64,000 nt of DNA, from positions 289,766-353,765 of the IMG/VR virus record IMGVR_UViG_3300028735_000003; one strand, 5' to 3'. This document shows, one piece after another, positions 29,367 to 61,976 of this stretch. Each line of letters starts with the position of its first letter. Positions within the stretch are counted from its first letter, which is position 1. The notes under the pieces are model-generated. The model was given only the letters and a program-made list of their open reading frames with translations, had not been told where the DNA came from and searched no databases. A program made the translations under genes and the position numbers.

Positions 29367-29702
29367 TTAGTCGTTGGAGTATATCAGTGACTGCAATAAT
29401 GTTTCAAGCATTTCAATTGAATGCAAACCAACTTTAGTTTGCACAGCTTGCCCGTTATTAAATAAAATAATGGTTGGCACACCCCGAATATTATATTTGT
29501 AAGCAAGATCTGGAGAATCGTCGATATCTACCTTGACTACGTTAACTCGTCCAACATTATTTGCAAGAAACTTTTCTAATATTAAAGTTTGTCGCCTGCA
29601 TGGTCCACACCACACTGCGCTGAAATCCACCAATACTGGCAACTCAGAATCTAACACATTTACATCAAAGTTTTCGCTGTTAACTTGTAAAATTTGGCTC
29701 AT
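29367..29702 (-). CDS. trxA: thioredoxin
   Basis: WCGPC, GVPT. Confidence 0.93.
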   Translation of the reverse strand: MSQILQVNSENFDVNVLDSELPVLVDFSAVWCGPCRRQTLILEKFLANNVGRVNVVKVDIDDSPDLAYKYNIRGVPTIILFNNGQAVQTKVGLHSIEMLETLLQSLIYSND

Positions 29703-29718
29703 AATTTACCTACTCCAC

Positions 29719-29746
29719 AGTATGTATTTTATAAAATTATAGTCAA
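29719..29746 (-). promoter_or_regulatory. sigma70-like promoter upstream of thioredoxin
   Basis: TTGACT-N16-CATACT. Confidence 0.45.
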
Positions 29747-29753
29747 GCGGTGC

Positions 29754-31895
29754 CTATTTTTTAATAATAATGTTCTCGTTTAATTTGGAAAACAAATCGA
29801 AAAATGGTTTGCATTCATACAATTTATGCTTAGCTATCATATCAAAATCAAAAGAATTATATAATCCCATGACTTGGACTTCATGTTCGACATTGTTTTG
29901 TATTAGGAAATCACATAAATTATCCAATGCATAGAATCTTTTCTTTGATTTTGTATCTGATAAAGTCTTTTGTTTTGCAAAGTAACAAGCCGTTACTACA
30001 AAGACGACTTTCTCTGTTGGAAGAAGGTCAGCATATTTAAGATTCATTTGTCCGGATTCAATCAGAGAATAAACAAATGGTTCAAATTTTCTGTAATGCT
30101 CATACCAAATCTTAAATCTTATTCCAGCTTCGCTTCCAACAAATCCGGAAATAATTTGCGTTACAGAATCAATATCTACAATTTTCAATTTTTTGGCTTG
30201 TAATAAAGCATCTGATGCCAACGTCCAACCACGTGGAGACGGATTGGCATATGTAGTATCATTTGTTTTACCACAGGCAAACTCAGGATTACTTCTAAGA
30301 AAACCTAGTATTAAATCGTGAACGTCGTGAGCTTTTGCCCAATCTATCCACTTATCAAAATTAAATGATAATATATATTTGGCTCCTCTATCTAGCAATG
30401 CTGAGCTAATCATATTTGAATTAGCTCCTTCATCAATTAGATTCCCAGTTAGTATAGATGATACTACATTAATTCTTTTCCCATTTATCTTCTTGAATTG
30501 TAAGATTTCAAGTAACGGCGCAATAACTTCAGGTGGTGCTTTATCAACCTCATCAAACAATATAATTGAATCTGGCTTTTCATTATCTGATAAAGTCGGC
30601 AAAAAGTATGGAGATTTAAATGTAACAATATCTCCCTGTGCGTTCATATCTGGATATCCAGCTAAATCAGGTCTTTCAATAACAGATAAATTTATGTAGT
30701 TAATTTTTAGATTGCAATCTTTAGCAGATTGAATAACAATTTCAGTATTATGAGTAGGTATGAATGATCGTGTTATTAAATATAAATGTGATAAACTATC
30801 TACAGTAATACATCTCATAGGAATCGGAATGATTCTTTCTATATTTGTAATGTATCTATGAGTATTTTTTATATGTTGTCTGGAAGATTTGTTAATATTT
30901 TGTAATTTTCTTTTAAGACGGAAAATTGGTAACTTAGTAACAAAATATATTCCATGTCTATCTTGACATCTTTTACCATACGAACGGCTTTTATTTTTAT
31001 AAAAATGCGCCTTAATTCCAAGACTATTAACTAATAACAAAATTTGATTAGCCAATATCTCAATATTAGAGTAATATTCTATTTTGCCATTTTTTAGACA
31101 ATAGCCGTCAGTATCTAATAATCCTTGCAATAAGGATAATCTTTGTTCATACGAAGAATTAAGATAATCCTCTGGAATATGTTTATTATTAATAAGACCT
31201 AATTGCTTTAATTGTTTTTCTAGTAAATCAATTTTTATATAATTAAATTCTTCACCACCAATTAAATTTTCTGTTTTATAATTATAAGATTTAGATAAAT
31301 ATCCTATATTTGGTGTTTTATTAACAGAATAACCAGAAAGATTAATTTCATTTAAGATTTCATTATCAGTACATTCGATATATCCTGAATCAGATCTTCC
31401 TTTGCCTAACCAGCACCCCAAAACATACGGATCTATAAGTAGATCTTTAGTAGGATAATTTACTGGTAAAGTTGTTGGAATAGAATGACTTTCTTTTAAC
31501 GATAAGAAAATTTCCTTTGTTGATCTCACTTTTGGTTTAATATTTTTGTTTTTTCTGGCTTTTTTATTCCAAGTTAACCATAAATGATCTGCACAAGCAT
31601 TAACTACACTACCATCATCAAATGTAATTTTATATGACTCTGGATAATTATTTATTGGATGAAGTTGAATTACATTACAAATATTACCACACTCATCAAA
31701 AAGCTGATCTCCAAGTTTAAGATCTTTTAATTTAATAAATCCTTTTGGGGTAGGTAATTCTGTTTCAAGGTCAAGCATTTTACCTACTCCACGTCGTCCA
31801 AATAGAAACAGATTCTTCTGAGCTTTAATAAAGAATTTGCTTATATTTAAAGCTTGCTCCTGATCAATTTCTGGCAAATTAAGTGCATTATTCAT
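29754..31895 (-). CDS. MoxR-type AAA+ ATPase with intein in Walker A
   Basis: GRRGVGK|intein|TEI, FDEVDKA, SPRGW; paralogue of 43224-44387. Confidence 0.9.
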   Translation of the reverse strand: MNNALNLPEIDQEQALNISKFFIKAQKNLFLFGRRGVGKMLDLETELPTPKGFIKLKDLKLGDQLFDECGNICNVIQLHPINNYPESYKITFDDGSVVNACADHLWLTWNKKARKNKNIKPKVRSTKEIFLSLKESHSIPTTLPVNYPTKDLLIDPYVLGCWLGKGRSDSGYIECTDNEILNEINLSGYSVNKTPNIGYLSKSYNYKTENLIGGEEFNYIKIDLLEKQLKQLGLINNKHIPEDYLNSSYEQRLSLLQGLLDTDGYCLKNGKIEYYSNIEILANQILLLVNSLGIKAHFYKNKSRSYGKRCQDRHGIYFVTKLPIFRLKRKLQNINKSSRQHIKNTHRYITNIERIIPIPMRCITVDSLSHLYLITRSFIPTHNTEIVIQSAKDCNLKINYINLSVIERPDLAGYPDMNAQGDIVTFKSPYFLPTLSDNEKPDSIILFDEVDKAPPEVIAPLLEILQFKKINGKRINVVSSILTGNLIDEGANSNMISSALLDRGAKYILSFNFDKWIDWAKAHDVHDLILGFLRSNPEFACGKTNDTTYANPSPRGWTLASDALLQAKKLKIVDIDSVTQIISGFVGSEAGIRFKIWYEHYRKFEPFVYSLIESGQMNLKYADLLPTEKVVFVVTACYFAKQKTLSDTKSKKRFYALDNLCDFLIQNNVEHEVQVMGLYNSFDFDMIAKHKLYECKPFFDLFSKLNENIIIKK
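30747..31778 (-). mobile_element. class 3 intein (344 aa) with LAGLIDADG domain
   Basis: Starts MLDLETELPTP, block B ADHLW, block F MRCITV, block G PTHN|T; LAGLIDADG-like LGCWLGKG and LQGLLDTDG. Confidence 0.88.
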
Positions 31896-33074: not shown

Positions 33075-35045
33075 CTATAATTTATCAATCACTTTCTTCA
33101 GATATTTATTAACATTATACCACGAGTATTTAGATAATGATTTTTCAACTAAATCAATACATAAGTTATCTAACATTTGTTTATTTGGTTGTTTTGGAAG
33201 AACCGTAGATGTGGCATACAATTTATTGAGTGCTATGTCCTCTGACTCTGCAAACTCAATCAATTGTTCATAGGTCCAGGCTCCTTTTCGAATTGCCAGC
33301 AATTCTTCTTTATCCGGTCTCTTTACAATAACCTTGCCAGTAGTAAGGATCTCACGACACATACGAATTAATCTAACTAAATGATAGGCGTGTTTTGTGT
33401 TTCCCTGTATTGATACTCTGCCATTCCTTCTTGTGATAAGAATTTCATTAGGAACCGAAAAACAAACTATCTTTCTACCACGTACATTTTCTATTTTAAT
33501 ATGACTAGATGTAGAATTAAAGTTCGTAACAGAAACCGTTTTTTTATTACCAATATAAACATGATATATTGGAGAATTATCTCGATTTTTATATGGACCA
33601 CAAACTTCTGAAACAATGCCATTTGATATACACATAGCTTGTATTTGTCCTGCTAATTGTTTAGATGCAGTATAATACACAACGCTTTCTTTTTTGTATA
33701 TTCCATCTCCAAATAACAATGCATCTAATAAAATTAGAGCTTGTCTTTGTGATAAATTTATCCACCAATGTGGCAAATGTTTGTGTAAAGAACCATCCTT
33801 TGAAATATACGCGCCTAATAATTTTAAATAATTATCTGTAATATCGAAATCATTTGATTTTGGGCTTGCCGTTACTCTAACATAAAACCAACTATCGCGG
33901 TTATTTATTAAAGATTCAGCAGGCTTAATTTCCCAATTTGAATTATTTTCTTCATATTCGGCAGAAAAATTATTACTTTTCTGTATATCTATTTTAGATA
34001 TCCACATTCTGTGATTAGGAGTGACCGCGCATTCTGTGTTCTCAGATCTTAAAAATACAATTGGTCCTGAATATTCTTTACAGACTCTTTCATATGGAAA
34101 TTGATATTCGATTTCACCAGATTTTTGATTTAAAGTGGCTAATAACTCACAATCATTTATTTCACTATACAATTTCCAACCATTACTAGTCAAAAACTCT
34201 GTATCATCTAAATAACAATCATATCCGAATTTTTCTTCTAAAGAAGCGCGAGCTGGATTTCTGTTTTTCTTCCAATTTTGATATTGATCCCATTCTCTTT
34301 TCTTAGAAAGATATTCTCGCTCTTTTTGCATAACTTGAATAAAGTTATCATTTAGACCAACCTTGCGAGCAGCCGCCTCCCAATGTTGATCTGCGGTAAT
34401 CTTTAACTCAGCAAGCATGCTAATCATGGTAGATTGAATAGCAATCTTAGTCGACTCTTCAAGATCTTCAAGGAAGGAAAATTGGAACCTATCTAATTCC
34501 TTTTGAACCTCAGCAGCAACCGCCATTAGTTGATCTTGTGGTATCATAGTTTGTTCGGGCAAGCCAAACTCAGCCCTTGTCGGAGGAGACTTAGGCGGAG
34601 TCATAATCCACTTCTTATGTGTCTTAATTCTTTTTAATTGAGAAATAGAATATCCCATGAATGTGTGCTTAATTTTTTTTGATAAAAAATCATTCTTATG
34701 CTCTAAGATGATTTCACCAATCGGATCTACGATACAATGATCAGATGCATCTGTATGAAGCACTTCAATAATATTAGGATTACAATCTGACGCCAATGTA
34801 AAAAATTTGCGAATATCATAGATAACAGCATCAGGCCCATGAAGTTCTGCTTGTTCAAACTTATTAATAGCACCAAAAAAATATTTTTTTGGAGGAATAG
34901 CAATTCCTTTAAAGTCTTCATCGCTCTCAGGCGTGTTAGTTCCATAAGCATGAGAACCGTGTCTTACTAAGAGAACGGTTCTTCCGTCAATCCATCCTAA
35001 GTGTGGAGAATTCTTTAATATCGTTTCTATTACAGTGTGTTTCAT
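33075..35045 (-). CDS. DNA polymerase beta-superfamily nucleotidyltransferase (RlaP/PF10127-like) with intein
   Basis: HGSHAYGTNTPESDEDFKG, NPNIIEVL, GYD|intein|TKHAYHLVRL. Confidence 0.85.
   Translation of the reverse strand: MKHTVIETILKNSPHLGWIDGRTVLLVRHGSHAYGTNTPESDEDFKGIAIPPKKYFFGAINKFEQAELHGPDAVIYDIRKFFTLASDCNPNIIEVLHTDASDHCIVDPIGEIILEHKNDFLSKKIKHTFMGYSISQLKRIKTHKKWIMTPPKSPPTRAEFGLPEQTMIPQDQLMAVAAEVQKELDRFQFSFLEDLEESTKIAIQSTMISMLAELKITADQHWEAAARKVGLNDNFIQVMQKEREYLSKKREWDQYQNWKKNRNPARASLEEKFGYDCYLDDTEFLTSNGWKLYSEINDCELLATLNQKSGEIEYQFPYERVCKEYSGPIVFLRSENTECAVTPNHRMWISKIDIQKSNNFSAEYEENNSNWEIKPAESLINNRDSWFYVRVTASPKSNDFDITDNYLKLLGAYISKDGSLHKHLPHWWINLSQRQALILLDALLFGDGIYKKESVVYYTASKQLAGQIQAMCISNGIVSEVCGPYKNRDNSPIYHVYIGNKKTVSVTNFNSTSSHIKIENVRGRKIVCFSVPNEILITRRNGRVSIQGNTKHAYHLVRLIRMCREILTTGKVIVKRPDKEELLAIRKGAWTYEQLIEFAESEDIALNKLYATSTVLPKQPNKQMLDNLCIDLVEKSLSKYSWYNVNKYLKKVIDKL
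33399..34217 (-). mobile_element. class 1 intein (273 aa) with eroded LAGLIDADG domain
   Basis: Starts CYLDDTEFLT, block B VTPNHRM, block F IVCFSV, ends IQGN|T. Confidence 0.85.
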
Positions 35046-36472: not shown

Positions 36473-37624
36473 TCACCACTCCAAAATATCCGAGTCATCA
36501 ATACCAGTAGAGATATATTTAACAGCACACCCTGAAAAATTGCTAATATAGTCAATAAATGGGGCTACTTCATCTTTATTTTTAGAATTTTTCCAACCTG
36601 GAAGACTAATTAACTGCACATTTGTGCCAAAAAAGTCGGATGGACATACCGGGATTTTATCATATGCTGCGCATATTTTTACTCTTTCCATGCCATCTAA
36701 TATGTCCAGCTTAGTAATTATTAAATTTTGAATGCCGCCTTTCTCACAAGCATATTTAGTGGCAGGTAAATCAAACCAACCAATTCTTCTTGGTCTACCT
36801 GTTGTCGCGCCATATTCATTACCAGCTTTTCTTAAAAACTCAGCCTCTTCACCGTGAATTTCGGTAGGAAATGGACCTTCTCCAACTTTGGTCAAATAAG
36901 CTTTGGCGACACCATAAACATTATCTAGTCTTATAAAATTAAATCCGCTAGTATATATGCCAGCAATCGTCGCATCACTGCAACTTACATAAGGATAAGT
37001 GCCGTGATTAATATCAATCATAACACCCTGAGACCCCTCAAATAATAAATCAGTTTTCATAAATTCGCGTTTCAATTCAAGAATATGTTTGAATTGAACA
37101 CCAGCCTCTTGTAGAGAGGAAGTTATTTCGCTGTTTGCTTTCAGCAAGTCCTTAATTCTTGTGCCTTTACGAGCGATTTTGCTCTTATAGGCAGGACCAA
37201 TGCCTTTATTAGTAGAACCGATGTATCCATTTGTCGCCGCATCTTCTTTTTTATGTTCTGGAAGAACAACGAATGCATCTGGGTCAACATAGATTCTTTT
37301 GGCAATATCTCCGAACTTATATTGACATGTAGACGCACTATCCTCTTCAACTTTCATGATTTCTGTATAAAGTTGATCCAAATCAATAACCATGCCTTGA
37401 GCGAGAAAGCATTTAGTATCTGGTAGTCTCCAGTCGAAAGATGGCAGAAGATTATGCACATACTTTAACTTTTGTCCATTGGAGAATGAACGGTAAATAG
37501 TGTGACCTGCGTTGGCTCCACCATTAAATCTAATTACCCATTCAAAATGTTTTGAAAAATAATGAGTAATACGCCCCTTGCCCTCATCTCCCCATGAGCT
37601 TCCGATAATTGCTATATTTGCCAT
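36473..37624 (-). CDS. purA: adenylosuccinate synthetase
   Basis: WGDEGKG, GGANAGHT, EGSQG, GATTGRPRRIGW, TKLD. Confidence 0.96.
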   Translation of the reverse strand: MANIAIIGSSWGDEGKGRITHYFSKHFEWVIRFNGGANAGHTIYRSFSNGQKLKYVHNLLPSFDWRLPDTKCFLAQGMVIDLDQLYTEIMKVEEDSASTCQYKFGDIAKRIYVDPDAFVVLPEHKKEDAATNGYIGSTNKGIGPAYKSKIARKGTRIKDLLKANSEITSSLQEAGVQFKHILELKREFMKTDLLFEGSQGVMIDINHGTYPYVSCSDATIAGIYTSGFNFIRLDNVYGVAKAYLTKVGEGPFPTEIHGEEAEFLRKAGNEYGATTGRPRRIGWFDLPATKYACEKGGIQNLIITKLDILDGMERVKICAAYDKIPVCPSDFFGTNVQLISLPGWKNSKNKDEVAPFIDYISNFSGCAVKYISTGIDDSDILEW

Positions 37625-41576: not shown

Positions 41577-43187
41577 TTAGCTTCTTAAGTCAAACGCCCT
41601 ACCAAATGGAGGATTAAATGTGCTTCCACTCGTAATTAGCCAGATAACATCTTTACCCGGATTTTTCATTTCTGCGAAATCAGAGTCAAGTAAGAATCCA
41701 TCTGTAATTACAACTAGAAAATCACAATAACCCAAATTATCTTCATAATCATTAAAAAAGTCAGCGAATTTAGTGCCGCCTCGCCCATAGACTTTTACCT
41801 TAAGTATCTCTTCCGGATTGAACTTCTTGATCTTAACAGCTTTATTCCAATAAATTTGAGCATCAGCCGGAACGATAGTTCCTTCTGCCCTTTCATCTAA
41901 AGCACAAAGCTGCGACAATCCGAACGCCATATCATCTTTGCTCATAGATCCACTAGTGTCTAATAGACATCCAAAACTGGCGCAATAATTCTTCCTCTTA
42001 GGAACCAACAACCCAGCAAACATTGGACGTGTTCTGAATCTGGTCCAATCATTTTTTCCATTACCAGCCCTAGCTTTTAGCAACCGAGCTCTTATAATAT
42101 CTTGCCAAGTAACCTTTGGAGCTGTTAGCTTTCCGAGCTCTCCTTCAAGAGCACCAGGGACATGACCAGCCATCTTTTTAGCTGCTTCCATAGCATCTGA
42201 AATTCTCTTGGCTAGCTTCTCTTCAGATTCTTCTGTATCCATATGATCATCTAATGTATCTCCAAATCCGAAAATATCGAATCCGTCGCCACATTCTGGA
42301 CACTGTCCTTCTGGATATTTGCCAGAACAACCAGGATAAGGCGCGCCATCATCACCAGTACCTGAACATTGATCTCCAGATTTATCTTCTTTTTCACAAT
42401 CAGAAGAATTGCCGTATCCTTTGCCATTTTGCGGTTGTGGCTTCTTATATATTCCAACTCTACCGCACTTAGGACATTTTGGAAGTAAACTATAAAAAAG
42501 ATCATAAATTTTTTCCGGACTCCTCATATCTTCGTCAATATCTGGATCTGCATAATAAAACTTAACTGCTTTCTCTCTACGTTCTAGTTCTTTTTGTTCT
42601 TGAGGAGTCAGTTCTCTATCCTCATTTGCTTTTGGAAGACTAATATGAAGATCATTATCAAACTCAGGATGTAAATCTTCAAATCCTTTTGGAGGATGAA
42701 ATGGATCTTTAAGGAGCTCTACGTAAGCCTTCAGTGGCATATACCTTCCGACTTCTTTAGTAAAAAAATCATGCGGATTTTGTTTTCTAGACTTTAAATC
42801 ATCCATACACGTACCATTAACAATGTAGTCAACGGCAATGTTCCATAGTTTTGGAATACGAGAGCCTCTGCGTTGAGGATGCATATAGATTGCGTGCCAT
42901 GCTTCATGGCTACATATAATGCGTAAACCCTTTCTACTTGTTTTAAGTACAAACTTTGGATTCCAGTAGTACCTCTTACCATCAGTGGCGGCAGTTGGAA
43001 TATTTAAAGTACATATATGATCAATAGGATACATAAGACTGAATATTAAAGGATCTCCACCTAAACAAGTTCCCACATATTCATTATTATATCTTGTGCC
43101 CAGTTCCAAAAATACCTGAGATAATCTATCTTCAGCTTTTGCAACTAATTTATCATCAACCTTACCGATAATTCTAGAAAACTTCAT
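41577..43187 (-). CDS. DUF2201-type metallopeptidase plus VWA-like domain protein
   Basis: TAATDG, HEAWH (HExxH), NIAVDYIVN, MIDAS DTSGS, GRGGT, VITDG. Confidence 0.88.
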   Translation of the reverse strand: MKFSRIIGKVDDKLVAKAEDRLSQVFLELGTRYNNEYVGTCLGGDPLIFSLMYPIDHICTLNIPTAATDGKRYYWNPKFVLKTSRKGLRIICSHEAWHAIYMHPQRRGSRIPKLWNIAVDYIVNGTCMDDLKSRKQNPHDFFTKEVGRYMPLKAYVELLKDPFHPPKGFEDLHPEFDNDLHISLPKANEDRELTPQEQKELERREKAVKFYYADPDIDEDMRSPEKIYDLFYSLLPKCPKCGRVGIYKKPQPQNGKGYGNSSDCEKEDKSGDQCSGTGDDGAPYPGCSGKYPEGQCPECGDGFDIFGFGDTLDDHMDTEESEEKLAKRISDAMEAAKKMAGHVPGALEGELGKLTAPKVTWQDIIRARLLKARAGNGKNDWTRFRTRPMFAGLLVPKRKNYCASFGCLLDTSGSMSKDDMAFGLSQLCALDERAEGTIVPADAQIYWNKAVKIKKFNPEEILKVKVYGRGGTKFADFFNDYEDNLGYCDFLVVITDGFLLDSDFAEMKNPGKDVIWLITSGSTFNPPFGRAFDLRS

Positions 43188-43223
43188 GTAATCTCCAATT
43201 TATTATATATCTTCAGGTTGTTA

Positions 43224-44387
43224 TCAATCGTCAACTTTTCTATTAATCTTATTTAAAACCTCTTCCCAGTCCGGGTGTTCATCAAGATTAAACTTCACCA
43301 ATCTGTCAATCTGAATCTGGCTCCTTACAGAGACTAGAACGTTTTCGTATGTTACCTTTTGTAGGAATTTTCCAACGTAATTTACCGATGGTGGCATCTC
43401 ATTTTCATTCGAATTGTCTAATTGGGTTGCTAATCTTGCGCAGGTAATCATGCATGCAACAAGCTTCTTTGTTGGTTCCAATTTGGCATACCTTTGTGAT
43501 ACATCTTTGCCATTGAAAATATCTTCAATCATTGGGAGTAGTTGCTGATAATGTTCGTAATAATTTGAGTATTTAATACCAGCATCTTTGCCAACACAAC
43601 CAGATACTTTGTTATTCAAAAGTGTTGTGCTCCAACCATGTGCCTCTCCTTTATATAAAAGCTCAGACGCACGAGCCCAGCCTCTAGGAGAAGGGTCCGC
43701 ATAACGATCATCTGGGTCAACATTACCAAATAAATCTTTAGGATGATCAGTAATATACGAGGTAATAGATGGATGAATATGCCCAATCTTACCAGCCCAT
43801 TCTAACCAAGAAGAAGCATCGGCTTCAACCAAATACTTCTCAGCCCTATCTAATAGAGGTAAACTTGGTCTGGCTCCTCCCTCCGATATAAGGTTGCCAG
43901 TCATGATAATAGCTCTTAGATTAGGAAGAGACTTACCATTTATTGATCTAAATTGAGTGAACTCTAATAGTGGCGCCCACAGACTTGTATCAGCCTTATC
44001 AACTTCGTCAAGTAAAGCTACTACTCCTTCATTACCATCTATCATCTTCTGATAGAAAGCAGGAAGCAAAAACTCTACGAACCTACGTTTGGCAGAGGCG
44101 CCCATAATATCAGGATATCCACCCATATCTACACGCTCCAAAACAGAGAGATTTAGGTATACTTCCTGTAGCCCAGCCTTCTTAATTTGATATTTGGCAA
44201 TTTCAGTTTTGCCAGTGCCTCTTCTACCAAAAACTGCAATATTGCTACCTACTTGAATTGCAGCAGCAATATGTTCAGACAGTTCTTTTGTGCTGAGTTT
44301 CTGAAGGTTGAAGTCAGATGTTGCCATTTGTTGTTGAGTTTGAGCCATTATCTTCTCCGTATAAATCTTTCTAATAAAGAAAATCAC
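43224..44387 (-). CDS. MoxR-type AAA+ ATPase (probable start 44348)
   Basis: GRRGTGKT, LDEVDKA, SPRGW; directly upstream of VWA partner. Confidence 0.9.
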   Translation of the reverse strand: MIFFIRKIYTEKIMAQTQQQMATSDFNLQKLSTKELSEHIAAAIQVGSNIAVFGRRGTGKTEIAKYQIKKAGLQEVYLNLSVLERVDMGGYPDIMGASAKRRFVEFLLPAFYQKMIDGNEGVVALLDEVDKADTSLWAPLLEFTQFRSINGKSLPNLRAIIMTGNLISEGGARPSLPLLDRAEKYLVEADASSWLEWAGKIGHIHPSITSYITDHPKDLFGNVDPDDRYADPSPRGWARASELLYKGEAHGWSTTLLNNKVSGCVGKDAGIKYSNYYEHYQQLLPMIEDIFNGKDVSQRYAKLEPTKKLVACMITCARLATQLDNSNENEMPPSVNYVGKFLQKVTYENVLVSVRSQIQIDRLVKFNLDEHPDWEEVLNKINRKVDD

Positions 44388-51796: not shown

Positions 51797-54121
51797 TTAT
51801 GTATTATCATCTCTTCCACTTAAAATTATCTTTTTAATTTCTGGATCTACAGAATAATTATTCAATAAAATTTTATCAATTTCATCATTATTTAGGTCAA
51901 GTAATCTAAGTTGAACTTTATAAGAAATATTAAAGTGTTTAGCTAATAATTTAAGATCATCAATCGGTGGATTACTATCAATAAACTCTAATCGTTGTTC
52001 TTCTGTGCCAAAATCGACCACGTAATATTTGTCATATTCTATTTCCTTTTTAGGAAATTCTCTAGGCGGTAATATTGGCTTACGTCTATCCGCCTCATAT
52101 TCATCAATCAAAGCTAATATTTCTGGAGTAACATTATTGTTTTTTTTGACATTTTGCCTAACATCTTTATCACTATCTTTAGCTAATAAAGCTAATATTT
52201 CAGTAGATGTATTATTGTTTGCCGCAACATTTTGTCTAACATATACATTATTATCTTTAGCCAATAAGGCTAATGTTCCTGAATATGTATTATTATTTGC
52301 TGCAACATTTTGTCTAACACCATGATAATTATCTTTAGCTAAGAAAGCTAATATTTCTGTAGGTGTATTATTGTTCTCTGCAACATTTTGTCTAACAAAT
52401 ACATCATTATCTTTAGCTAAGAACGCTAATATTTCTGTAGGTGTATTATTGTTTACTGCAACAGCCTGTCTAACATATTCATTGTTGTCTTTAGCTAATA
52501 AAGCTAATATTTCTGGTGATGTATGCTTGTTTGATGCAACATATTGTCTAAGATATTTATCATTATCTTTAGTAGCCAATAAAGCTAGTATTTCTTGAGG
52601 TGTATTATTGTTTTTTGCAACGCTTCTTCTAACATCGAAATCATCATCTTTAGCTAATAAAGATAATGTTTCTGGAGACGTATTATTATTTCTTGCAACA
52701 TTTATCCTAACAAATTTATAATAATCTTTAGCTAATAAAGCTAATATTTCTGTTGATGTATGCTTGTTTGATGCAACAAATTCTCTAACATTTGTGTTAT
52801 TATCTTTAGATAATAAAGTCAAAGTTTCTGGAGATGTATTATTGTTTTCTGCAACATTTCTCCTAACATATTCATCATTATCTTTAGCTAAGAAAGCCAA
52901 TGTTTCTGTAGGTGTATTCTTGTTGTCTGCGACACTCATTCTAACAAATGCATGGTAATCTTTAGCTAATAAAACTAGTGTTTCTGGGAGTGTATTGCTG
53001 TTTTTTGCAACTAGTTGTCTAACATCTCCGTCATTATCTTTAGCTAATAAAGCTAATGCTTCTGGAGGTGTATTATTATTTGCTGCAACATATTGTCTAA
53101 TATATACATCATTATCTTTAGATAATCTAGCTAATATCCTAGGATCAGTTTCTTCTTCTATTAATACACGCCTAAATTCATCATTCAAATATTTATAAGC
53201 TTGAATCTTTTGGTTATACTGTATATCATGTTCCATCATATATGAAACAATATCAACCTGGTTTTTAATCTTTTGATATTTTTCAGGAAAATGATATATA
53301 TTAAAATTAGGATTAACAGAAATAGCAACAGCCATAAAATGATTAAATTCTTCTAAAGATAATAATCCTTCCATGGCGTAAACAATAGCACCGGCAGGAA
53401 AAGCTTCAGCATCTTTAATAATTATCTCCTTTACTAAATTATAACCAGGGATATTTTCTGGGTCATAAATTTTATCAATAGCATCAAACGCTTCTATTTT
53501 TAATACATTATTGTCTACATCTCTTTGAGCTGCAAAAGCCACTTTATACAACGTATTGTGTGAAGGTAATGTCTTATCTATAAAATAATATATTACAACA
53601 TTATGATTTATATAGTTTTCATAATGAGGAACTTCTTGAGATGTTACACACCATCTTGTACCAGATCCGAAAGAACATGCTGCTAAATGAGTGTCAGGTC
53701 TAATTAACACATATCTTTCATTCTCAAATAATTTTTTGGCTGATTCATCCTTTACTTCAACAGTTCTTCTAACTTTATTCTCTAGGTCTTTAAGAACTTT
53801 ATTTAACTCTTCTAACGAGTTAAACTTTGAAATATCTCTATATTCTTCAGCAAGAGCTGGTAATTTTCTATCAAATAAATTAATAGAGTTTACTAATTCT
53901 TCTTGTGATTCTCCTTTGACTAGTTGACTAACTATCCAATCAAGATATTTCTGTTTAACTTTTTTGTTATTGGTTAAATCATCTATCTGAGAAGACAAAT
54001 GAGGATATCTATTTTTTAGATCCTTTACTGCTGCGGTCAGTATTATACTGTATAATCCCATCCTTGAGATCTTATAAAAATTATCGATTGATGATATTAA
54101 TTGACTATACTTGTACATCAC
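51797..54121 (-). CDS. LRV/HEAT-like repeat protein paralogue 1 (13 repeats)
   Basis: Conserved N-terminal domain (FGSGTRWCVTS), 26-aa repeats, conserved C-terminal cap. Confidence 0.93.
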   Translation of the reverse strand: MMYKYSQLISSIDNFYKISRMGLYSIILTAAVKDLKNRYPHLSSQIDDLTNNKKVKQKYLDWIVSQLVKGESQEELVNSINLFDRKLPALAEEYRDISKFNSLEELNKVLKDLENKVRRTVEVKDESAKKLFENERYVLIRPDTHLAACSFGSGTRWCVTSQEVPHYENYINHNVVIYYFIDKTLPSHNTLYKVAFAAQRDVDNNVLKIEAFDAIDKIYDPENIPGYNLVKEIIIKDAEAFPAGAIVYAMEGLLSLEEFNHFMAVAISVNPNFNIYHFPEKYQKIKNQVDIVSYMMEHDIQYNQKIQAYKYLNDEFRRVLIEEETDPRILARLSKDNDVYIRQYVAANNNTPPEALALLAKDNDGDVRQLVAKNSNTLPETLVLLAKDYHAFVRMSVADNKNTPTETLAFLAKDNDEYVRRNVAENNNTSPETLTLLSKDNNTNVREFVASNKHTSTEILALLAKDYYKFVRINVARNNNTSPETLSLLAKDDDFDVRRSVAKNNNTPQEILALLATKDNDKYLRQYVASNKHTSPEILALLAKDNNEYVRQAVAVNNNTPTEILAFLAKDNDVFVRQNVAENNNTPTEILAFLAKDNYHGVRQNVAANNNTYSGTLALLAKDNNVYVRQNVAANNNTSTEILALLAKDSDKDVRQNVKKNNNVTPEILALIDEYEADRRKPILPPREFPKKEIEYDKYYVVDFGTEEQRLEFIDSNPPIDDLKLLAKHFNISYKVQLRLLDLNNDEIDKILLNNYSVDPEIKKIILSGRDDNT

Positions 54122-54129
54122 AAATATAC

Positions 54130-54147
54130 TTACATATTAATATGTAA
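54130..54147. promoter_or_regulatory. 18-bp palindrome upstream of paralogue 1
   Basis: TTACATATTAATATGTAA. Confidence 0.7.
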
Positions 54148-54190
54148 AAATTAAAAAAAATTTTTATAAATATGTTATCACAAACTATAC

Positions 54191-56731
54191 CTAATAGTCT
54201 TTTCCACCCAGAATTATCTTTTTAATTTCCGGATCTACCGTATAGTTATTCAACAATATCTCATCAATTTCATCATTATTTAAATAAAGCAATCTGAGTT
54301 GAACTTTATAAGAGATATTAAAGTGTTTAGCCAATAATTTAAGATCATTAATTGGAGGATTACTATCAATAAATTTTAATCGTTGTTCTTCTGTACCAAA
54401 ATTGATTATATAGTTGTTGTCATATTCTATTTCTTTTTTAGGAAACTCTCTAGGATGTAATATTCGCTTGGGTTTAGCGGATTCATATTCATCTATTAAA
54501 GCTAATATTTCTGGAGTAACATTATTGTTTTTTGCAACGAGTTGTCTAACATCTTTATCACTATCTTTAGCTAATAAAGCTAACGTTGCTGTAGATGTAT
54601 TATTATTTGCTGCGACTAGTCTTCTGACTGACACCTCATTATCTTTGGCTAATAAATCCAATGTTTCTGGAGATGTATTATTATTTCTTGCAACATTTTG
54701 TCTAACATGTACATCATTATCTTTAGCTAATAAAGCTAATGTGGCTGGAGATGTATTATTATGTTCTGCAACATGTTGTCTAATAGATGTATATTTATCT
54801 TTAGCTAATAAAGCTAATATTTCTGGAGACATATTACTGTTTAATGCAAGATGTGTTTTAACATATATACTGTTACTTTTAGCCAATAAAAATAATATTT
54901 TTGTAGGTGTATTATTATTTGCTGCAACATATATTCTAACATCCTCATCATAATCTTTATATAATAAAGATAATGTTTCTTTAGATGTATTATTATTTTT
55001 TGCAACATGTTGCCTAACAGACACATCTCTATCTTTAGCTAGCAAAGCTAATGTTTCTGGAGATGTATTATTATTTCCTGCAACATTTGTCCTAACAATC
55101 GCATCATTATCTTTGGCTAATAAAACTAACGTTTCTTGAGATGTATTATTATTTTTTGCAACATTTCTCTTAACAAAGACACCATTGTTTTTAGCTAATA
55201 AATCCAATGTTTCTTTGGATGTATTATTGTTTGCTGCAACAGATTGTCTAACATATGTATTATTATCTTTAGCTAATAGATCTAATATTTCTGGAGATGT
55301 ATTATTATGTTCTGCAACAGATTGCCTAATAATCTCATAATTATCTTTAGCTAATAAAGCAAATATCTCTGAATGAGTGTTATGGTTTTTTGCAACATAT
55401 TCTCTAACAGATACATCATTATCTCTAGCTAACAAAGCTAATGTTTCTGCAGAAGTATTATTATTTGCCGCAACATTTTGTCTAACATTTAAATCATTAT
55501 CTTTAGCTAATAAAGCTAATGTAGCTGGAGACGTATTGTTATTTTCTGCAACGTATTCTCTAACAGATACATCATTATCTCTAGCTAACAAAGCTAATGT
55601 TTCTGCAGAAGTATTATTATTTGCCGCAACAGATTGTCTAATATATTTACCATTATCTCTAGCTAACAAAGCTAATGTTTCTGCAGATGTATTCTTGTTT
55701 TCTGCAACAGCTTGTCTAACATATTTATCATTGTCTTTAGCTAATTTAGCTAATACCCTTGGATCAGTTTCCTTTTCTGTTAGTACTAGTTTAAATTCAT
55801 CATTTAAATATTTATAAACTTGAAGTTTTTGATTATATTGTATGTTATGTTTCATAACATATGAAAAAATATCCGTCTGTTTTTTAATCTGTTGATATTT
55901 TTCAGGGAAAGAAGACAAATCAAAATAAGCGCCAACATCAATAGCAACAGACATAAAATGATTAAATTCTTCTAAAGATAATAATCCTTCCATGGCGTAA
56001 ACAATAGCACCAGCGGGAAAAGCTTCAGCATCTTTAATAATTATCTGCTTTACCAAATTATAACCAGCAATATCTTCTGGTTCATAAATTTTATCAGTCG
56101 CATCAAATGCTTCTATTTTTAATACGTTATTGTCTAGATCTCTTTGAACAGCAAAAGCTACTTTATACAATATATTTTGTGAAGGCAAGGTCTTATCTAT
56201 AAGATAATATATTACAACATTATGATTTATATAGTTTTCATAGTGAGGAACTTCTTGAGATGTTACACACCATTTTGTACCAGATCCAAAAGAACATGCT
56301 GCTAACTTAGTATCTGGTCTAATTAACACATATCTTCCATTTTCAAATAATTTCTTGGCTGATTCATCTTTTACTTCAACAGTTCTTCTAACCTTATTTT
56401 CTAGGTCATTAAGAACTTTCTTTAAATCTGCTAACGAATTAACCCTTGAAATATCTCTATTTTCTACAGAAAGAGCTGGTAATTTTCTATCAAACAACTC
56501 AATATAACGTAATAATTCTTCTTGAGATTCTCCTTTGTCTAATTGATAAACTATCCAATCAAGATATTTCGATTTAACTTTACCATTTAAATAATCTATT
56601 TTAGAAGACAGATGAGGATATCTATCTTTTAAATGCTTTACTGATGCGGTCAGTATTATACTGTATAACCCCATCCTTGAGATCTTATAAAAATTATCAA
56701 TTGATGATATTAGTTGACTATACTTGTACAT
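54191..56731 (-). CDS. LRV/HEAT-like repeat protein paralogue 2 (16 repeats)
   Basis: Same architecture as paralogue 1. Confidence 0.93.
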   Translation of the reverse strand: MYKYSQLISSIDNFYKISRMGLYSIILTASVKHLKDRYPHLSSKIDYLNGKVKSKYLDWIVYQLDKGESQEELLRYIELFDRKLPALSVENRDISRVNSLADLKKVLNDLENKVRRTVEVKDESAKKLFENGRYVLIRPDTKLAACSFGSGTKWCVTSQEVPHYENYINHNVVIYYLIDKTLPSQNILYKVAFAVQRDLDNNVLKIEAFDATDKIYEPEDIAGYNLVKQIIIKDAEAFPAGAIVYAMEGLLSLEEFNHFMSVAIDVGAYFDLSSFPEKYQQIKKQTDIFSYVMKHNIQYNQKLQVYKYLNDEFKLVLTEKETDPRVLAKLAKDNDKYVRQAVAENKNTSAETLALLARDNGKYIRQSVAANNNTSAETLALLARDNDVSVREYVAENNNTSPATLALLAKDNDLNVRQNVAANNNTSAETLALLARDNDVSVREYVAKNHNTHSEIFALLAKDNYEIIRQSVAEHNNTSPEILDLLAKDNNTYVRQSVAANNNTSKETLDLLAKNNGVFVKRNVAKNNNTSQETLVLLAKDNDAIVRTNVAGNNNTSPETLALLAKDRDVSVRQHVAKNNNTSKETLSLLYKDYDEDVRIYVAANNNTPTKILFLLAKSNSIYVKTHLALNSNMSPEILALLAKDKYTSIRQHVAEHNNTSPATLALLAKDNDVHVRQNVARNNNTSPETLDLLAKDNEVSVRRLVAANNNTSTATLALLAKDSDKDVRQLVAKNNNVTPEILALIDEYESAKPKRILHPREFPKKEIEYDNNYIINFGTEEQRLKFIDSNPPINDLKLLAKHFNISYKVQLRLLYLNNDEIDEILLNNYTVDPEIKKIILGGKDY

Positions 56732-56742
56732 TACAAATATAT

Positions 56743-56760
56743 TTACATATTAATACACAA
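56743..56760. promoter_or_regulatory. degenerate 18-bp palindrome upstream of paralogue 2
   Basis: TTACATATTAATACACAA. Confidence 0.6.
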
Positions 56761-56792
56761 AAATAAAAAAATTATAGGTATGTTATTACGGA

Positions 56793-59186
56793 TTAGGTCT
56801 TGTAATCTCTTCCACTTAAAATTATTTTTTTAATTTCCGGATCTACCGTATAGTTATTCAACAATATCTCATTAATTTCATCATTATTTAAATCAAGCAA
56901 TCTGAGTTGAACCTTATAAGAGATATTAAAGTGTTTAGCTAATAATTTAAGATCATTAATCGGTGGATTACTATCAATAAATTTCAGTCGTTGTTCTTCT
57001 GTACCGACGTTGATTATATAGTTGTTGTCAAATTCTATTTCTTTTTTAGGAAACTCTCTAGTAGGTAATATTCTCTTACGTCTATCTGCTTCATATTCAT
57101 CTATTAAAGATAATATTTCTGGAGTAACGTTTTTGTTTTTTGTAACAGCTTGTCTAACGCCTTTATCGCTATCTTTAGCTAATAAAGCTAATGTTTCTTG
57201 TGGTGTATTATTGTTTTTTGCAACATTTTTTCTAACATATTTATCACTATCTTTAGCTAATAAAGCTAATATTTCTGTAGATGTATTATTATTCGATGCA
57301 ACATTTTCTCTAACAAACACATCATTATCTTTATACAATAAAGATAATGTTTCTGGAGATGTATTATTATTTTTTGCAACTAGTCTTCTAACAACTACGT
57401 CACTACCTTTAGTTAATAAAGACAATGTTTCTGGATGTGTATTATTGTTTTTTGCAACATTTTGTCTAACAACTTTATCATCGTCTTTAGCTAATAAAAA
57501 CAATGTTTCTGCTGAAGTATTATTGTTTTTTGCAACATGTTGTCTAACACCGTCATCATAATCTTTAGCTAATAAAGCTAATGTTTCTGGAGATGTATTA
57601 TTGTTTGATGCAACATTTTCTCTAACAAGAACATCATTATCTATAGCCAATAAAGCTAATATTTTCTGAGATGTATTATTATTTTCTGCAACACCTTGCC
57701 TAATATATCTACTATTATCTTTAGCTAATAACCCTAATATTTCTTGAGGTGTATTATTATTTAGTGCAACATGTTCTCTAACATATTCATTATCTTTAAC
57801 TAATAAATATAATATTTCTTTAGGTGTATTATTATTTCCTGCAACACGTTGTCTAACACGTTCATTGTGATCTTTGCTCAATAAAGCAAATATTTCTTTA
57901 GGTGTATTATTGTTTTTTGCAACATTTTCCCTAACAGTTATATCATTATCTTTAGCTAATAAAGCTAATACTTCTGGAGGTGTATTATTGTTTTTTGCAA
58001 CATTTTCCCTAACAGTTATATCATTATCTTTAGCTAATAAAGCTAATACTTCTGGAGGTGTATTATTATTTCCTGCAACATTCTCTCTTACAAGTGCATA
58101 ATTATCTTTAGCTAATAAAGCTAATACTTCTGGAGGTGTATTATTATTTCCTGCAACATATTGTTTAATATATGCATCATTAGCCAATATACTCAATATC
58201 CTTGGATTAGTTTCTTCTTTTACTAATGCGCGCATAAATTCATAATCTAAATATTTATAAGCCTGAAGTTTTTGATTATATTGTATATCATGTTCCATGA
58301 TATAAGAAACAATATCAACCTGTTTTTTAACCTGTTGATATTTTTCTGGGAACTCATCCAAATTAAAAGGATGGCCAACAGAAATAGCAACAGACATAAA
58401 ATGATTAAATTCTTCTATAGACAATAATCCCTCTTTTGCGTATACAACGGCACCAGTAGGAAAAGCTTCAGCATCTTTGATAATTATTTCTTTTACTAAA
58501 TTATAACCAGGCATATCTTCTGGTTTATAAATTTTATCAGCCGCGTCAAACGCCTCTATTTTTAATACCTTATTATCTAGATCTCTTTTAGCCGCAAAAG
58601 CCACTTTATACAATATATTTTGTGAAGGTAAGGTCTTATCTATAAGATAATAAATTACAGTGTTGTGATTTATATAGTTTTCATAATGAGGAACTTCTTG
58701 AGAAGTTATGCACCATCTTGTACCAGATCCAAAAGAACATGCTGCCAAATGAGTATCTGGTCTAATTAATACATATCTTTCATTTTCAAATAATTTCTTG
58801 GCTGATTCATCTTTTACTTCAACAGTTCTTCTAACTTTATTCTCTAGGTCTTTAAGAACTTTATTTAACTCTTCTAATGACTTAAACTTCGAAATATCCC
58901 TATATTCTGCAGCAAGAGCTTGTGATTTTCTATCAAATAAATTAATAGAGTTTACTAATTCTTCTTGTGATTCTCCTTTGAGAAGTTGACTAACTATCCA
59001 ATCAAGATATTTCGGTTTAACTCCTTTGTTGATTAAATAATCTATCTGAGAAGATAGCTCAGGATATTTTTCTTTTAGAGCCTTTACTGATACGGTTGAT
59101 GCGGTCAGTATTATACTGTATAATCTCATACTTGAGATTTTATAAAAATTATCAATTGATGATATTAATTGACTATACTTGTACAT
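56793..59186 (-). CDS. LRV/HEAT-like repeat protein paralogue 3 (14 repeats)
   Basis: Same architecture; includes a near-exact 78-bp tandem duplication starting at 57901. Confidence 0.93.
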   Translation of the reverse strand: MYKYSQLISSIDNFYKISSMRLYSIILTASTVSVKALKEKYPELSSQIDYLINKGVKPKYLDWIVSQLLKGESQEELVNSINLFDRKSQALAAEYRDISKFKSLEELNKVLKDLENKVRRTVEVKDESAKKLFENERYVLIRPDTHLAACSFGSGTRWCITSQEVPHYENYINHNTVIYYLIDKTLPSQNILYKVAFAAKRDLDNKVLKIEAFDAADKIYKPEDMPGYNLVKEIIIKDAEAFPTGAVVYAKEGLLSIEEFNHFMSVAISVGHPFNLDEFPEKYQQVKKQVDIVSYIMEHDIQYNQKLQAYKYLDYEFMRALVKEETNPRILSILANDAYIKQYVAGNNNTPPEVLALLAKDNYALVRENVAGNNNTPPEVLALLAKDNDITVRENVAKNNNTPPEVLALLAKDNDITVRENVAKNNNTPKEIFALLSKDHNERVRQRVAGNNNTPKEILYLLVKDNEYVREHVALNNNTPQEILGLLAKDNSRYIRQGVAENNNTSQKILALLAIDNDVLVRENVASNNNTSPETLALLAKDYDDGVRQHVAKNNNTSAETLFLLAKDDDKVVRQNVAKNNNTHPETLSLLTKGSDVVVRRLVAKNNNTSPETLSLLYKDNDVFVRENVASNNNTSTEILALLAKDSDKYVRKNVAKNNNTPQETLALLAKDSDKGVRQAVTKNKNVTPEILSLIDEYEADRRKRILPTREFPKKEIEFDNNYIINVGTEEQRLKFIDSNPPINDLKLLAKHFNISYKVQLRLLDLNNDEINEILLNNYTVDPEIKKIILSGRDYKT

Positions 59187-59197
59187 TACAAATATAC

Positions 59198-59215
59198 TTA
59201 CATATTAATATGTAA
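59198..59215. promoter_or_regulatory. 18-bp palindrome upstream of paralogue 3
   Basis: TTACATATTAATATGTAA. Confidence 0.7.
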
Positions 59216-59249
59216 AAATTAAAAAATTTTATAAATATGTTATCACAAA

Positions 59250-61913: not shown

Positions 61914-61924
61914 TACAATTATAC

Positions 61925-61942
61925 TTACATATTAATATGTAA
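61925..61942. promoter_or_regulatory. 18-bp palindrome upstream of paralogue 4
   Basis: TTACATATTAATATGTAA. Confidence 0.7.
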
Positions 61943-61976
61943 AAATTAAAAAAATTTATAAGTATATCATTACGAA

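What the first reader, a model, noticed from the sequence alone, without database searches (positions are those of the whole stretch)
30747..31778. Class 3 intein beginning with Met, inserted in the Walker A of a MoxR ATPase
Seen: the intein-free paralogue reads GRRGTGK-TEI, fixing the junction at GK|M...HN|T. Residue 1 is Met (not a nucleophile) and the Trp(B)-Cys(F)-Thr(G) triplet is present. The first LAGLIDADG motif has Lys at the acidic position (WLGKG). Established: class 3 inteins use the block F Cys in place of residue 1, and unspliced P-loops are inactive. Inference: ATPase activity is gated by splicing, possibly redox-sensitive (thioredoxin is the next gene), and homing is probably impaired.
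Basis: partly seen in the sequence, partly recalled or inferred. Interest (0 to 1): 0.6.

Follow-up and report, generated by a model that had tools for sequence, protein, structure and literature searches.

The report
Class 3 intein in phage ATPase
A self-splicing protein insert (a class 3 intein with a damaged homing nuclease) sits exactly in the ATP-binding loop of a chaperone-like ATPase of an uncultured jumbo phage; it is real and well formed, but it is an ordinary member of a large, already described kind of phage intein.

Summary
The 713-aa ORF 29754..31895(-) is an AAA+ ATPase interrupted by a 344-aa intein (30747..31778). Intein-free orthologues (up to 85% identical) read FGRRGVGK|TEI, and an empty DNA allele reads GGTAAA|ACTGAG, so the junction GK|M...HN|T is exact. 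The intein aligns collinearly with solved class 3 inteins (MchDnaB1, Msm DnaBi1) and has His65, Trp67, Cys323, Thr342-His343-Asn344 and Thr+1.

Met1 is not special. Among the 120 nearest relatives, residue 1 is Gln (72) or Met (43). All sit after GK/GR and before Thr/Ser in ATPases and terminases, the classic site for class 3 inteins.

Lys126 replaces the first LAGLIDADG catalytic Asp, uniquely among the 120. The nuclease domain also carries 2-3 times more lineage-specific changes than in its closest relatives, while the splicing domain does not. The nuclease is probably crippled.

The thioredoxin argument fails: thioredoxin follows intein-free orthologues too. "MoxR" is only partly supported: AAA_5 passes Pfam's cut-off in the orthologues, and the paralogue has the metallopeptidase-vWA partner.

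Verdict: a new member of a known kind, of low to moderate interest. One open lead is an invariant Cys at block B position 7.

The parts
29754..31895 (-). Interrupted gene: AAA+ ATPase precursor of 713 aa (phrog_1297 'ATPase'; MoxR-like copy B)
31779..31895 (-). N-extein, residues 1-39, ending in Walker A ...FGRRGVGK
30747..31778 (-). Intein, 344 aa (Met1...Asn344): HINT splicing domain split by a LAGLIDADG nuclease domain
31572..31613 (-). Block B, GSVVNACADHLWLT: Cys62 (position 7), His65 (position 10), Trp67 (position 12, first residue of the WCT triplet)
31398..31430 (-). First LAGLIDADG motif, PYVLGCWLGKG. Lys126 (AAA, 31401..31403) stands where 114 of 120 relatives have Asp
31104..31139 (-). 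Second LAGLIDADG motif, LSLLQGLLDTDG, with Asp224 intact
30771..30821 (-). Block F, PMRCITVDSLSHLYLIT. Cys323 (30810..30812) is the block F position 4 nucleophile of class 3 inteins
30744..30767 (-). Block G, SFIPTHN|T: Thr342, His343, Asn344 and Thr+1 (first C-extein residue, Walker A Thr)
29754..30746 (-). C-extein, 330 aa plus stop: the rest of the AAA+ ATPase, under purifying selection (dN/dS about 0.05 against the intein-free orthologue)
43224..44387 (-). Intein-free paralogue A (387 aa; 33% identical). The empty site is K60|T61 at 44205..44210. In other phages this copy carries the same intein
41577..43187 (-). Metallopeptidase-vWA-like partner (DUF2201_N + DUF2201) of paralogue A
   Evidence: PMC7824862
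29367..29702 (-). Thioredoxin gene downstream. This is a conserved neighbour of copy B whether or not the intein is present

Best explanation
This is a full-length class 3 intein, made of a HINT splicing domain and a LAGLIDADG homing-endonuclease domain. [quoted passage not shown]

The precursor cannot form a P-loop. After translation, block F Cys323 is expected to attack the Lys39-Met1 peptide bond, helped by His65 and Trp67. The N-extein should then pass to Thr+1, Asn344 should cyclise, and the ATPase should be restored with the sequence GRRGVGKTEI. These chemical steps are inferred from the family; they are not shown here.

Met1 is a non-catalytic residue that is common in this clade. The element belongs to a very large clade of phage inteins that hop between G(K/R)|(T/S) sites of ATPases and terminases. 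It is scattered among orthologues as a mobile element would be.

In this particular copy the nuclease has lost the first catalytic Asp (Lys126) and is drifting. The copy is therefore probably past its mobile phase: it still splices but no longer homes efficiently. Splicing is most likely constitutive. Nothing in the locus indicates a dedicated regulatory link.
For: Junction.

Class 3 homology and collinear blocks with MchDnaB1 and Msm DnaBi1: (E 3e-13 and 2e-11; positions 2-69 and blocks F/G aligned).

Invariance of H65, W67, C323, T342, H343 and N344, with +1 Thr or Ser, in the 120 relatives.

Fold: AlphaFold2 pLDDT 91.5. Foldseek matches PI-SceI with TM 0.73-0.77 and class 3 mini-inteins with TM(target) 0.82-0.86.

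Host gene is functional: C-extein dN/dS about 0.05 against the intein-free orthologue. All 120 listed intein-free relatives are 69-85% identical.

Mobility signature: intein presence needs 7-12 gains or losses on the C-extein tree, with intein-bearing/intein-free sister pairs. The same intein sits in paralogue A in L005, and in DnaC-like, GpA-terminase and other proteins, always after GK/GR.

Nuclease decay: D126K is unique among the 120. The relative-rate test gives 21-26 against 6-14 unique changes in the nuclease domain (p<0.05 in 7 of 8 comparisons), with parity in the splicing domain.

Literature: the class 3 definition and the P-loop preference (PMC2807308); the 'classic' Lys|Thr insertion (PMC5050341); the equivalent Asp123/Asp219 mutated to kill the nuclease in a class 3 intein (PMC3196547).
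Against: No biochemical evidence exists for splicing, or for the block F branched intermediate, in this protein.

The nuclease domain is otherwise well conserved: only one deviation at columns conserved in at least 90% of sequences. A nickase or a residual activity is therefore not excluded.

The relative-rate test assumes that the chosen outgroups are true outgroups in the intein tree.

The Lys126 codon was not covered by the independent hot-spring contig, so it rests on one assembly. However, Asp (GAY) to AAA needs two base changes, so a sequencing error is unlikely.

Conditional splicing (redox or metal) is known for a related P-loop class 3 intein and cannot be ruled out.
Confidence: 0.8

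Rival explanations
1. Redox-gated switch. Splicing, and hence ATPase activity, is held off under oxidising conditions by a disulfide involving the block F Cys, and it is released by the phage thioredoxin encoded next door.
For: There is a precedent: Msm DnaBi1, a class 3 intein in a P-loop, is reversibly trapped by a Cys48-Cys118 disulfide, and by zinc bound to Cys118 (PMC6195587; PMC7360933). This clade has an invariant Cys62 at block B position 7 and a near-invariant Cys34. [quoted passage not shown]
Against: Thioredoxin is the immediate downstream neighbour of intein-free orthologues too (L006/L007; L005). The linkage is therefore to the ATPase or to synteny, not to the intein. The Msm partner Cys48 is Ser48 here. 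+1 is Thr, so no Cys1/Cys+1 trap is possible. No coordinates were available to measure the Cys62-Cys323 distance.
Confidence: 0.12
2. Still-mobile element. The Lys126 nuclease keeps enough activity (for example as a nickase using the intact second active site) to drive homing into empty alleles.
For: The nuclease fold is intact and confident. Only one conserved column deviates. The second motif Asp224 is intact. Intein presence is patchy among very close orthologues. Nicking LAGLIDADG variants are known to stimulate gene conversion (own knowledge, not checked here).
Against: In the related class 3 Arth_1007 intein, the two equivalent Asp were mutated together to block endonuclease activity (PMC3196547). 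Lys is found in 1 of 120 relatives. The nuclease domain of this copy shows excess lineage-specific change. Against the hot-spring allele it shows 5 nonsynonymous to 2 synonymous differences (small numbers). Paralogue A in the same genome shares the central 13 nt of the site and is still empty.
Confidence: 0.2
3. Dead insert. The intein no longer splices, copy B is a pseudogene in all but reading frame, and paralogue A supplies the function.
For: A paralogue exists in the same genome. Non-splicing class 3 relics are known, such as Arth_1007 (PMC3196547).
Against: Every residue that defines or assists class 3 splicing is present and matches the invariant columns. The frame is open over 713 codons. 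The C-extein has dN/dS about 0.05. The paralogues are only 33% identical and have different conserved neighbours, so they are unlikely to be redundant. A 98.9% identical allele persists in a second habitat.
Confidence: 0.04

Closest known systems
Mycobacteriophage Bethlehem DnaB intein (MP-Be DnaB), the prototype class 3 intein (Tori et al. 2010, PMC2807308)
   Same: A phage-borne, full-length intein of 341 aa (344 aa here) with a LAGLIDADG nuclease. It has no nucleophile at position 1, the numbering is almost identical (His65, Trp67, Cys320 against Cys323, Thr-His-Asn end), and +1 is Thr.
   Different: It starts with Pro1 (Met1 here) and has Ser62 at block B position 7 (Cys62 here). Its host protein is a DnaB helicase. 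Its nuclease was toxic in E. coli, that is apparently active, whereas the first catalytic Asp is Lys here.
Mycobacterium smegmatis DnaBi1 and M. chimaera DnaB1 class 3 mini-inteins (PDB 6BS8, 6OWN, 6RIX, 6RIY)
   Same: These are the best solved-structure matches by sequence (E 2e-11 and 3e-13). They are inserted in a P-loop after GK, they have the same WCT triplet, and they are collinear over residues 2-69 and blocks F/G.
   Different: They are mini-inteins without a nuclease, they are bacterial, and they have Ala1 and Asp62 (DxxH). The Msm redox partner Cys48 is Ser here.
Mycobacteriophage TerL1-a 'classic P-loop' inteins and other class 3 phage inteins (Kelley et al. 2016, PMC5050341)
   Same: [quoted passage not shown] They are class 3 inteins that move between unrelated ATPase exteins in phages.
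   Different: Their hosts are terminases of actinophages. Here the host is a MoxR-like AAA+ ATPase of a jumbo phage from microbial-mat and hot-spring metagenomes.
PI-SceI (VMA1 intein) and related bifunctional inteins
   Same: The overall two-domain architecture is the same: the predicted model matches PI-SceI with TM 0.73-0.77.
   Different: PI-SceI is class 1 (Cys1, Cys+1), has both catalytic Asp and an extra DNA-recognition region, and shares only 13% identity.
Jumbo-phage MoxR AAA+ ATPase / metallopeptidase-vWA pair (Iyer et al. 2021, PMC7824862)
   Same: Paralogue A (43224..44387) followed by the DUF2201_N + DUF2201 protein (41577..43187) fits the described pair.
   Different: The intein-bearing copy B is only 33% identical to A, and it is followed by thioredoxin rather than by a vWA protein. 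MoxR-specific Pfam models are not reached.

Membership tests
Class 3 intein | No Cys/Ser/Thr nucleophile at intein position 1 | tested here: met
   The junction is fixed by intein-free orthologues and by an empty DNA allele. Residue 1 is Met.
Class 3 intein | Trp at block B position 12, two residues after the block B His | tested here: met
   His65 and Trp67 align to His65 and Trp67 of 6BS8/6RIX. Both are invariant in 120 relatives.
Class 3 intein | Cys at block F position 4 | tested here: met
   Cys323 in PMRCITVD aligns to the catalytic Cys in VPVRCVEVD of 6RIX/6BS8. It is invariant.
Class 3 intein | Thr at block G position 5, C-terminal His-Asn, and Ser/Thr at +1 | tested here: met
   The sequence is T342-H343-N344|T. 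Among relatives, +1 is Thr in 112 and Ser in 8.
Class 3 intein | Splicing requires the block F Cys and passes through a block F branched thioester | not testable with these tools
   This needs a Cys323Ala reporter and detection of the intermediate.
Active LAGLIDADG homing endonuclease (double-motif) | Acidic metal-binding residue at the end of each of the two LAGLIDADG helices | tested here: not met
   Motif 1 has Lys126 (Asp in 114 of 120 relatives). Motif 2 has Asp224 intact.
Active LAGLIDADG homing endonuclease (double-motif) | Two-fold pseudo-symmetric alpha-beta-beta-alpha-beta-beta-alpha fold | tested here: met
   Pfam LAGLIDADG_3 E 6e-8. The model has pLDDT 91.5 and matches PI-SceI, PI-PfuI and I-DmoI.
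MoxR AAA+ ATPase | Match to MoxR-type AAA+ models (Pfam AAA_3 / bpMoxR; AAA_5 for the wider group) | tested here: inconclusive
   In the intein-free orthologues, AAA_5 reaches 25.7-30.2 bits (cut-off 22) and AAA 23-28.6 bits (cut-off 21.2). AAA_3 and bpMoxR reach only E 0.02-0.07, below cut-off. NCBIfam gives no specific family.
MoxR AAA+ ATPase | Adjacent vWA-domain partner | tested here: not met
   Copy B is flanked by an unknown 313-aa protein and by thioredoxin. The DUF2201 vWA-like partner follows paralogue A only; the same holds in L005.
Redox-trapped class 3 intein (Msm DnaBi1 type) | Cys48 partner for the block F Cys | tested here: not met
   Position 48 is Ser here (Ser 105, Ala 14 among relatives). 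Other cysteines (Cys34, Cys62) exist, but their geometry could not be measured.

The most novel reading that the evidence does not exclude
[quoted passage not shown] The experimentally studied class 3 inteins have Ser or Asp at that position. Position 7 and the block F Cys both face the N-terminal scissile bond. The pair could therefore act as a built-in thiol switch (disulfide or metal) or as a thiol relay in the first acyl transfer. That would make splicing of many phage ATPases and terminases conditional on the redox or metal state of the infected cell.
Probability: 0.12. Interest if true: 0.5.

Novelty: new member of a known kind. Interest (0 to 1): 0.25.

Why it matters
The finding adds a MoxR-like chaperone ATPase of jumbo phages to the list of P-loop proteins colonised by class 3 inteins. 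I found no paper that pairs inteins with MoxR ATPases, although the P-loop preference itself has been known since 2010.

It is a tidy natural example of the homing cycle. The same intein family occupies the same Walker A site in either of two paralogues in different phages. It is patchily present among near-identical orthologues. In this copy it keeps a perfect splicing apparatus while the nuclease has lost a catalytic Asp.

Practically, annotation pipelines should call the host gene as one ATPase plus an intein. The clade (thousands of metagenomic members, with Met1 or Gln1, a THN end and Thr+1) is also a source of class 3 inteins for protein engineering. None of this changes current understanding of inteins.

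Tried and rejected
1. Met1 as a distinguishing feature: rejected. Met1 occurs in 43 and Gln1 in 72 of the 120 relatives, and Ala, Arg or Gly in cultured phages.

2. Thioredoxin adjacency as evidence for redox control: rejected, because the same adjacency occurs next to intein-free orthologues.

3. General decay of the nuclease domain: not seen at highly conserved columns (1 deviation, the clade median). Only the finer relative-rate test shows an excess.

4. Nucleotide similarity to known phages: megablast of 17 kb found nothing. The host ATPase is at most 29% identical to anything in the phage collection.

5. Looking for an intein-less joint in public runs: none was seen, but coverage was thin and consisted of contigs only, so this says nothing. 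The Lys126 codon was not covered.

6. Measuring Cys62-Cys323 distances: not possible, because model coordinates are not exposed.

7. The supplementary table of class 3 N-terminal residues (Tori 2010) and the Tori & Perler 2011 paper are not held. I therefore cannot say whether Met1 was already listed in InBase.

8. A first tree script joined N- and C-exteins inside the script and did not finish. It was dropped and replaced by a tree of C-exteins only. The joined (spliced) product was never sent to any search or fold. The exteins were searched separately by reference.

9. The large HMMER representative search was not used.

Full report
**What is there**

The window is the last 64 kb of a 353,765-bp IMG/VR virus record. 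It is a T4-like jumbo phage with about 31% G+C. It carries rIIA, RNA ligase, polynucleotide kinase-phosphatase, thioredoxin and RlaP genes. It has no nucleotide-level relative among 50,697 phage records.

ORF 29754..31895 on the minus strand encodes 713 aa. Its N-terminal 39 residues end in FGRRGVGK. Residues 384-713 are an AAA+ ATPase body: phrog_1297 'ATPase' at E 1e-36, with a weak Pfam AAA_2 match. Residues 40-383 carry a LAGLIDADG_3 domain.

**The junction**

Three independent comparisons give the same boundaries.
- The paralogue at 43224..44387 reads GRRGTGK-TEI. BLASTP aligns the two flanks of the interrupted protein to contiguous residues 44-60 and 61-385 of that paralogue.
- A word search with the C-extein alone found 514 intein-free relatives. 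The best are 369 aa long and 85% identical, and they read FGRRGVGKTEII.
- At the DNA level, the empty allele in contig L006 reads GGTAAA|ACTGAG. The window has GGTAAA, then 1032 nt, then ACTGAA.

The intein is therefore exactly 30747..31778, Met1 to Asn344, with Thr+1. There is no sliding ambiguity.

**Class**

A sequence search of the PDB returns the class 3 mini-inteins MchDnaB1 (6RIX/6RIY, E 3e-13) and Msm DnaBi1 (6BS8, E 2e-11) as best hits. They are collinear over residues 2-69 and over blocks F and G.

This places His65 at block B position 10, Trp67 at position 12, Cys323 at block F position 4 and Thr342 at block G position 5. That is the Trp-Cys-Thr signature that defines class 3 together with a non-nucleophilic residue 1 and Ser/Thr at +1 (Tori et al. 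2010, PMC2807308). All of these residues are invariant in the 120 nearest relatives.

An AlphaFold2 model built on 57 sequences is confident (pLDDT 91.5). It matches bifunctional inteins (PI-SceI, TM 0.73-0.77) and class 3 mini-inteins (target TM 0.82-0.86).

Every testable membership criterion is met. The obligate block F thioester can only be shown at the bench.

**How unusual it is**

It is not very unusual.
- The word search restricted to the intein found 3204 proteins at E<1e-5.
- In the best 120, residue 1 is Gln (72), Met (43), or rarely Arg, Lys, Ala or Leu.
- Every copy sits after GK or GR and before Thr or Ser. The hosts are the same ATPase, its paralogue, DnaC-like loaders, GpA-type and Terminase_6-type terminases, and others.
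- Cultured-phage relatives at about 33% identity lie in the terminases of Synechococcus phage B23, coliphage kvi and Rhodobacter phage RcKickapoo, and in a mycobacteriophage Cas4-family exonuclease. They start with Ala, Ala, Arg and Gly.

The literature already states that most class 3 inteins lie in ATPase P-loops (PMC2807308). It calls the Lys|Thr position the 'classic' P-loop insertion (PMC5050341). A 2020 survey counted 1701 class 3 inteins in the NCBI non-redundant protein database (nr), 82.5% of them with LAGLIDADG motifs (PMC7891396).

The same genome holds two more class 3 inteins. One, with Met1, is in a GpA-type terminase that also carries a class 1 intein. The other, with Ala1, is in the Walker A of a helicase.

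**The host protein**

Intein-free orthologues pass Pfam's cut-offs for AAA_5 and AAA. They reach only E 0.02-0.07 for the MoxR-specific models AAA_3 and bpMoxR. NCBIfam gives nothing specific.

Paralogue A is followed by a DUF2201_N/DUF2201 protein, that is a metallopeptidase plus a vWA-like domain. This is the MoxR-vWA chaperone pair that Iyer et al. described for group 2.2 jumbo phages (PMC7824862). Copy B, which carries the intein, is 33% identical to A. It has other conserved neighbours: a protein of about 310 aa upstream and thioredoxin downstream.

'MoxR-like' is a fair description, but membership is not proven.

**Mobility and state of the nuclease**

On a tree of C-exteins (138 rows), intein presence needs at least 7 changes on well-supported branches and 12 by parsimony. 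There are sister pairs of intein-bearing and intein-free alleles, P0003/P0124 and P0004/P0140. In contig L005 the intein sits in paralogue A while copy B is empty. This is the pattern of a homing element.

In the window's copy, the first LAGLIDADG acidic residue is Lys126 (AAA). Relatives have Asp in 114 cases, Asn in 3 and Gly in 2, and none of the other 119 sequences has Lys. The equivalent pair Asp123/Asp219 was mutated to Ala to kill the nuclease in a related class 3 intein (PMC3196547).

At strongly conserved columns, this Lys is the only deviation in the nuclease domain. A Tajima relative-rate test, however, shows 21-26 lineage-specific changes in the nuclease domain of this copy against 6-14 in its closest relatives. 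That difference has p<0.05 in 7 of 8 outgroup choices. The splicing domain is balanced.

A 98.9% identical allele from a hot-springs metagenome differs by 5 nonsynonymous and 2 synonymous changes in the covered nuclease part. In the C-extein it differs by 3 nonsynonymous and 5 synonymous changes. The numbers are small and only suggestive.

The C-extein itself is under strong purifying selection (dN/dS about 0.05 against L006). The gene is therefore in use, and the intein must splice.

**Redox idea**

The thioredoxin gene directly follows the intein-free orthologue in L006, L007 and L005. Its position therefore carries no information about the intein.

The known redox trap of Msm DnaBi1 uses Cys48 (PMC6195587), and that position is Ser here. 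What remains is an observation worth a bench test. Block B position 7 is an invariant Cys (Cys62) in this clade, and Cys34 is nearly invariant. The studied class 3 inteins have Ser or Asp at position 7.

- The exteins were searched separately and by reference. The joined, spliced product was not sent to any search or fold.
- One script joined the exteins internally for a tree. It did not finish and was replaced by a C-extein-only tree.
- The large representative search was not used.

**Verdict**

This is a new member of a well-known kind, with a probably disabled homing nuclease. Interest is low to moderate.

Noticed in passing
window 33075..35045 (-); intein 33399..34217: The RlaP-family nucleotidyltransferase two genes upstream carries a separate class 1 intein of 273 aa (Cys1 ... 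Gly-Asn|Thr) with a LAGLIDADG_3 domain. The intein-free orthologue in L006 reads FGYD|TKHAYH. In L005 RlaP is also interrupted (731 aa).
   Followed up: partly
L002 (G000:C1:247335-251390) and L003 (G000:C1:147497-151540), outside the window: The same phage has a GpA-type terminase with two inteins. One is class 3 with Met1, inserted GR|M...THN|T just before the Walker B FFDE; the other is class 1, DE|C...HN|C. A helicase also has a class 3 Ala1 intein in its Walker A (GSGK|A...THN|T). That makes at least five inteins in one genome.
   Followed up: partly
window 31593..31595 (Cys62) and 31677..31679 (Cys34): Block B position 7 is Cys in all 120 nearest relatives and in the two other class 3 copies of this genome. 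Cys34 is present in 118 of 120. Characterised class 3 inteins have Ser or Asp at position 7. The possible thiol pair with Cys323 is untested.
   Followed up: partly
window 31779..31795 (-): The Walker A codons GGA GTA GGT AAA place a GGAG eight bases upstream of the intein's ATG (Met1). The empty allele in L006 has GGTGTTGG instead. An internal start giving intein plus C-extein is conceivable, but it was not tested.
   Followed up: no
window 36473..37624 (-): A short (383-aa) adenylosuccinate-synthetase homologue (Pfam E 9e-103) has as its best PHROG the family named '2-aminooxy adenylosuccinate synthetase' (phrog_1211), that is PurZ-like. If it is PurZ, the phage might make 2-aminoadenine DNA. 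No DatZ or MazZ search was done.
   Followed up: no
window 41577..44387 (-): Paralogue A of the ATPase, with a DUF2201_N metallopeptidase + DUF2201 vWA-like protein downstream, matches the jumbo-phage MoxR-vWA pair of Iyer et al. 2021. The central 13 nt of its Walker A site are identical to the occupied site of copy B, yet it is empty.
   Followed up: partly
window 30747..31778: The intein is more A+T-rich than its host gene: G+C 0.27 against 0.32, and third-position G+C 0.14 against 0.23.
   Followed up: partly
window 29500..31348: Public runs that hold this stretch are a microbial-mat metagenome (the likely source), a hot-springs metagenome (98.9% identical contig across the C-terminal splice junction) and, in short pieces, a rhizosphere metagenome.
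   Followed up: partly
window 51797..63998 (-): Five consecutive large ORFs (774, 846, 797, 887 and at least 580 aa) are mostly without PHROG matches among the four scanned. Only the 887-aa ORF hits a family of unknown function.
   Followed up: no
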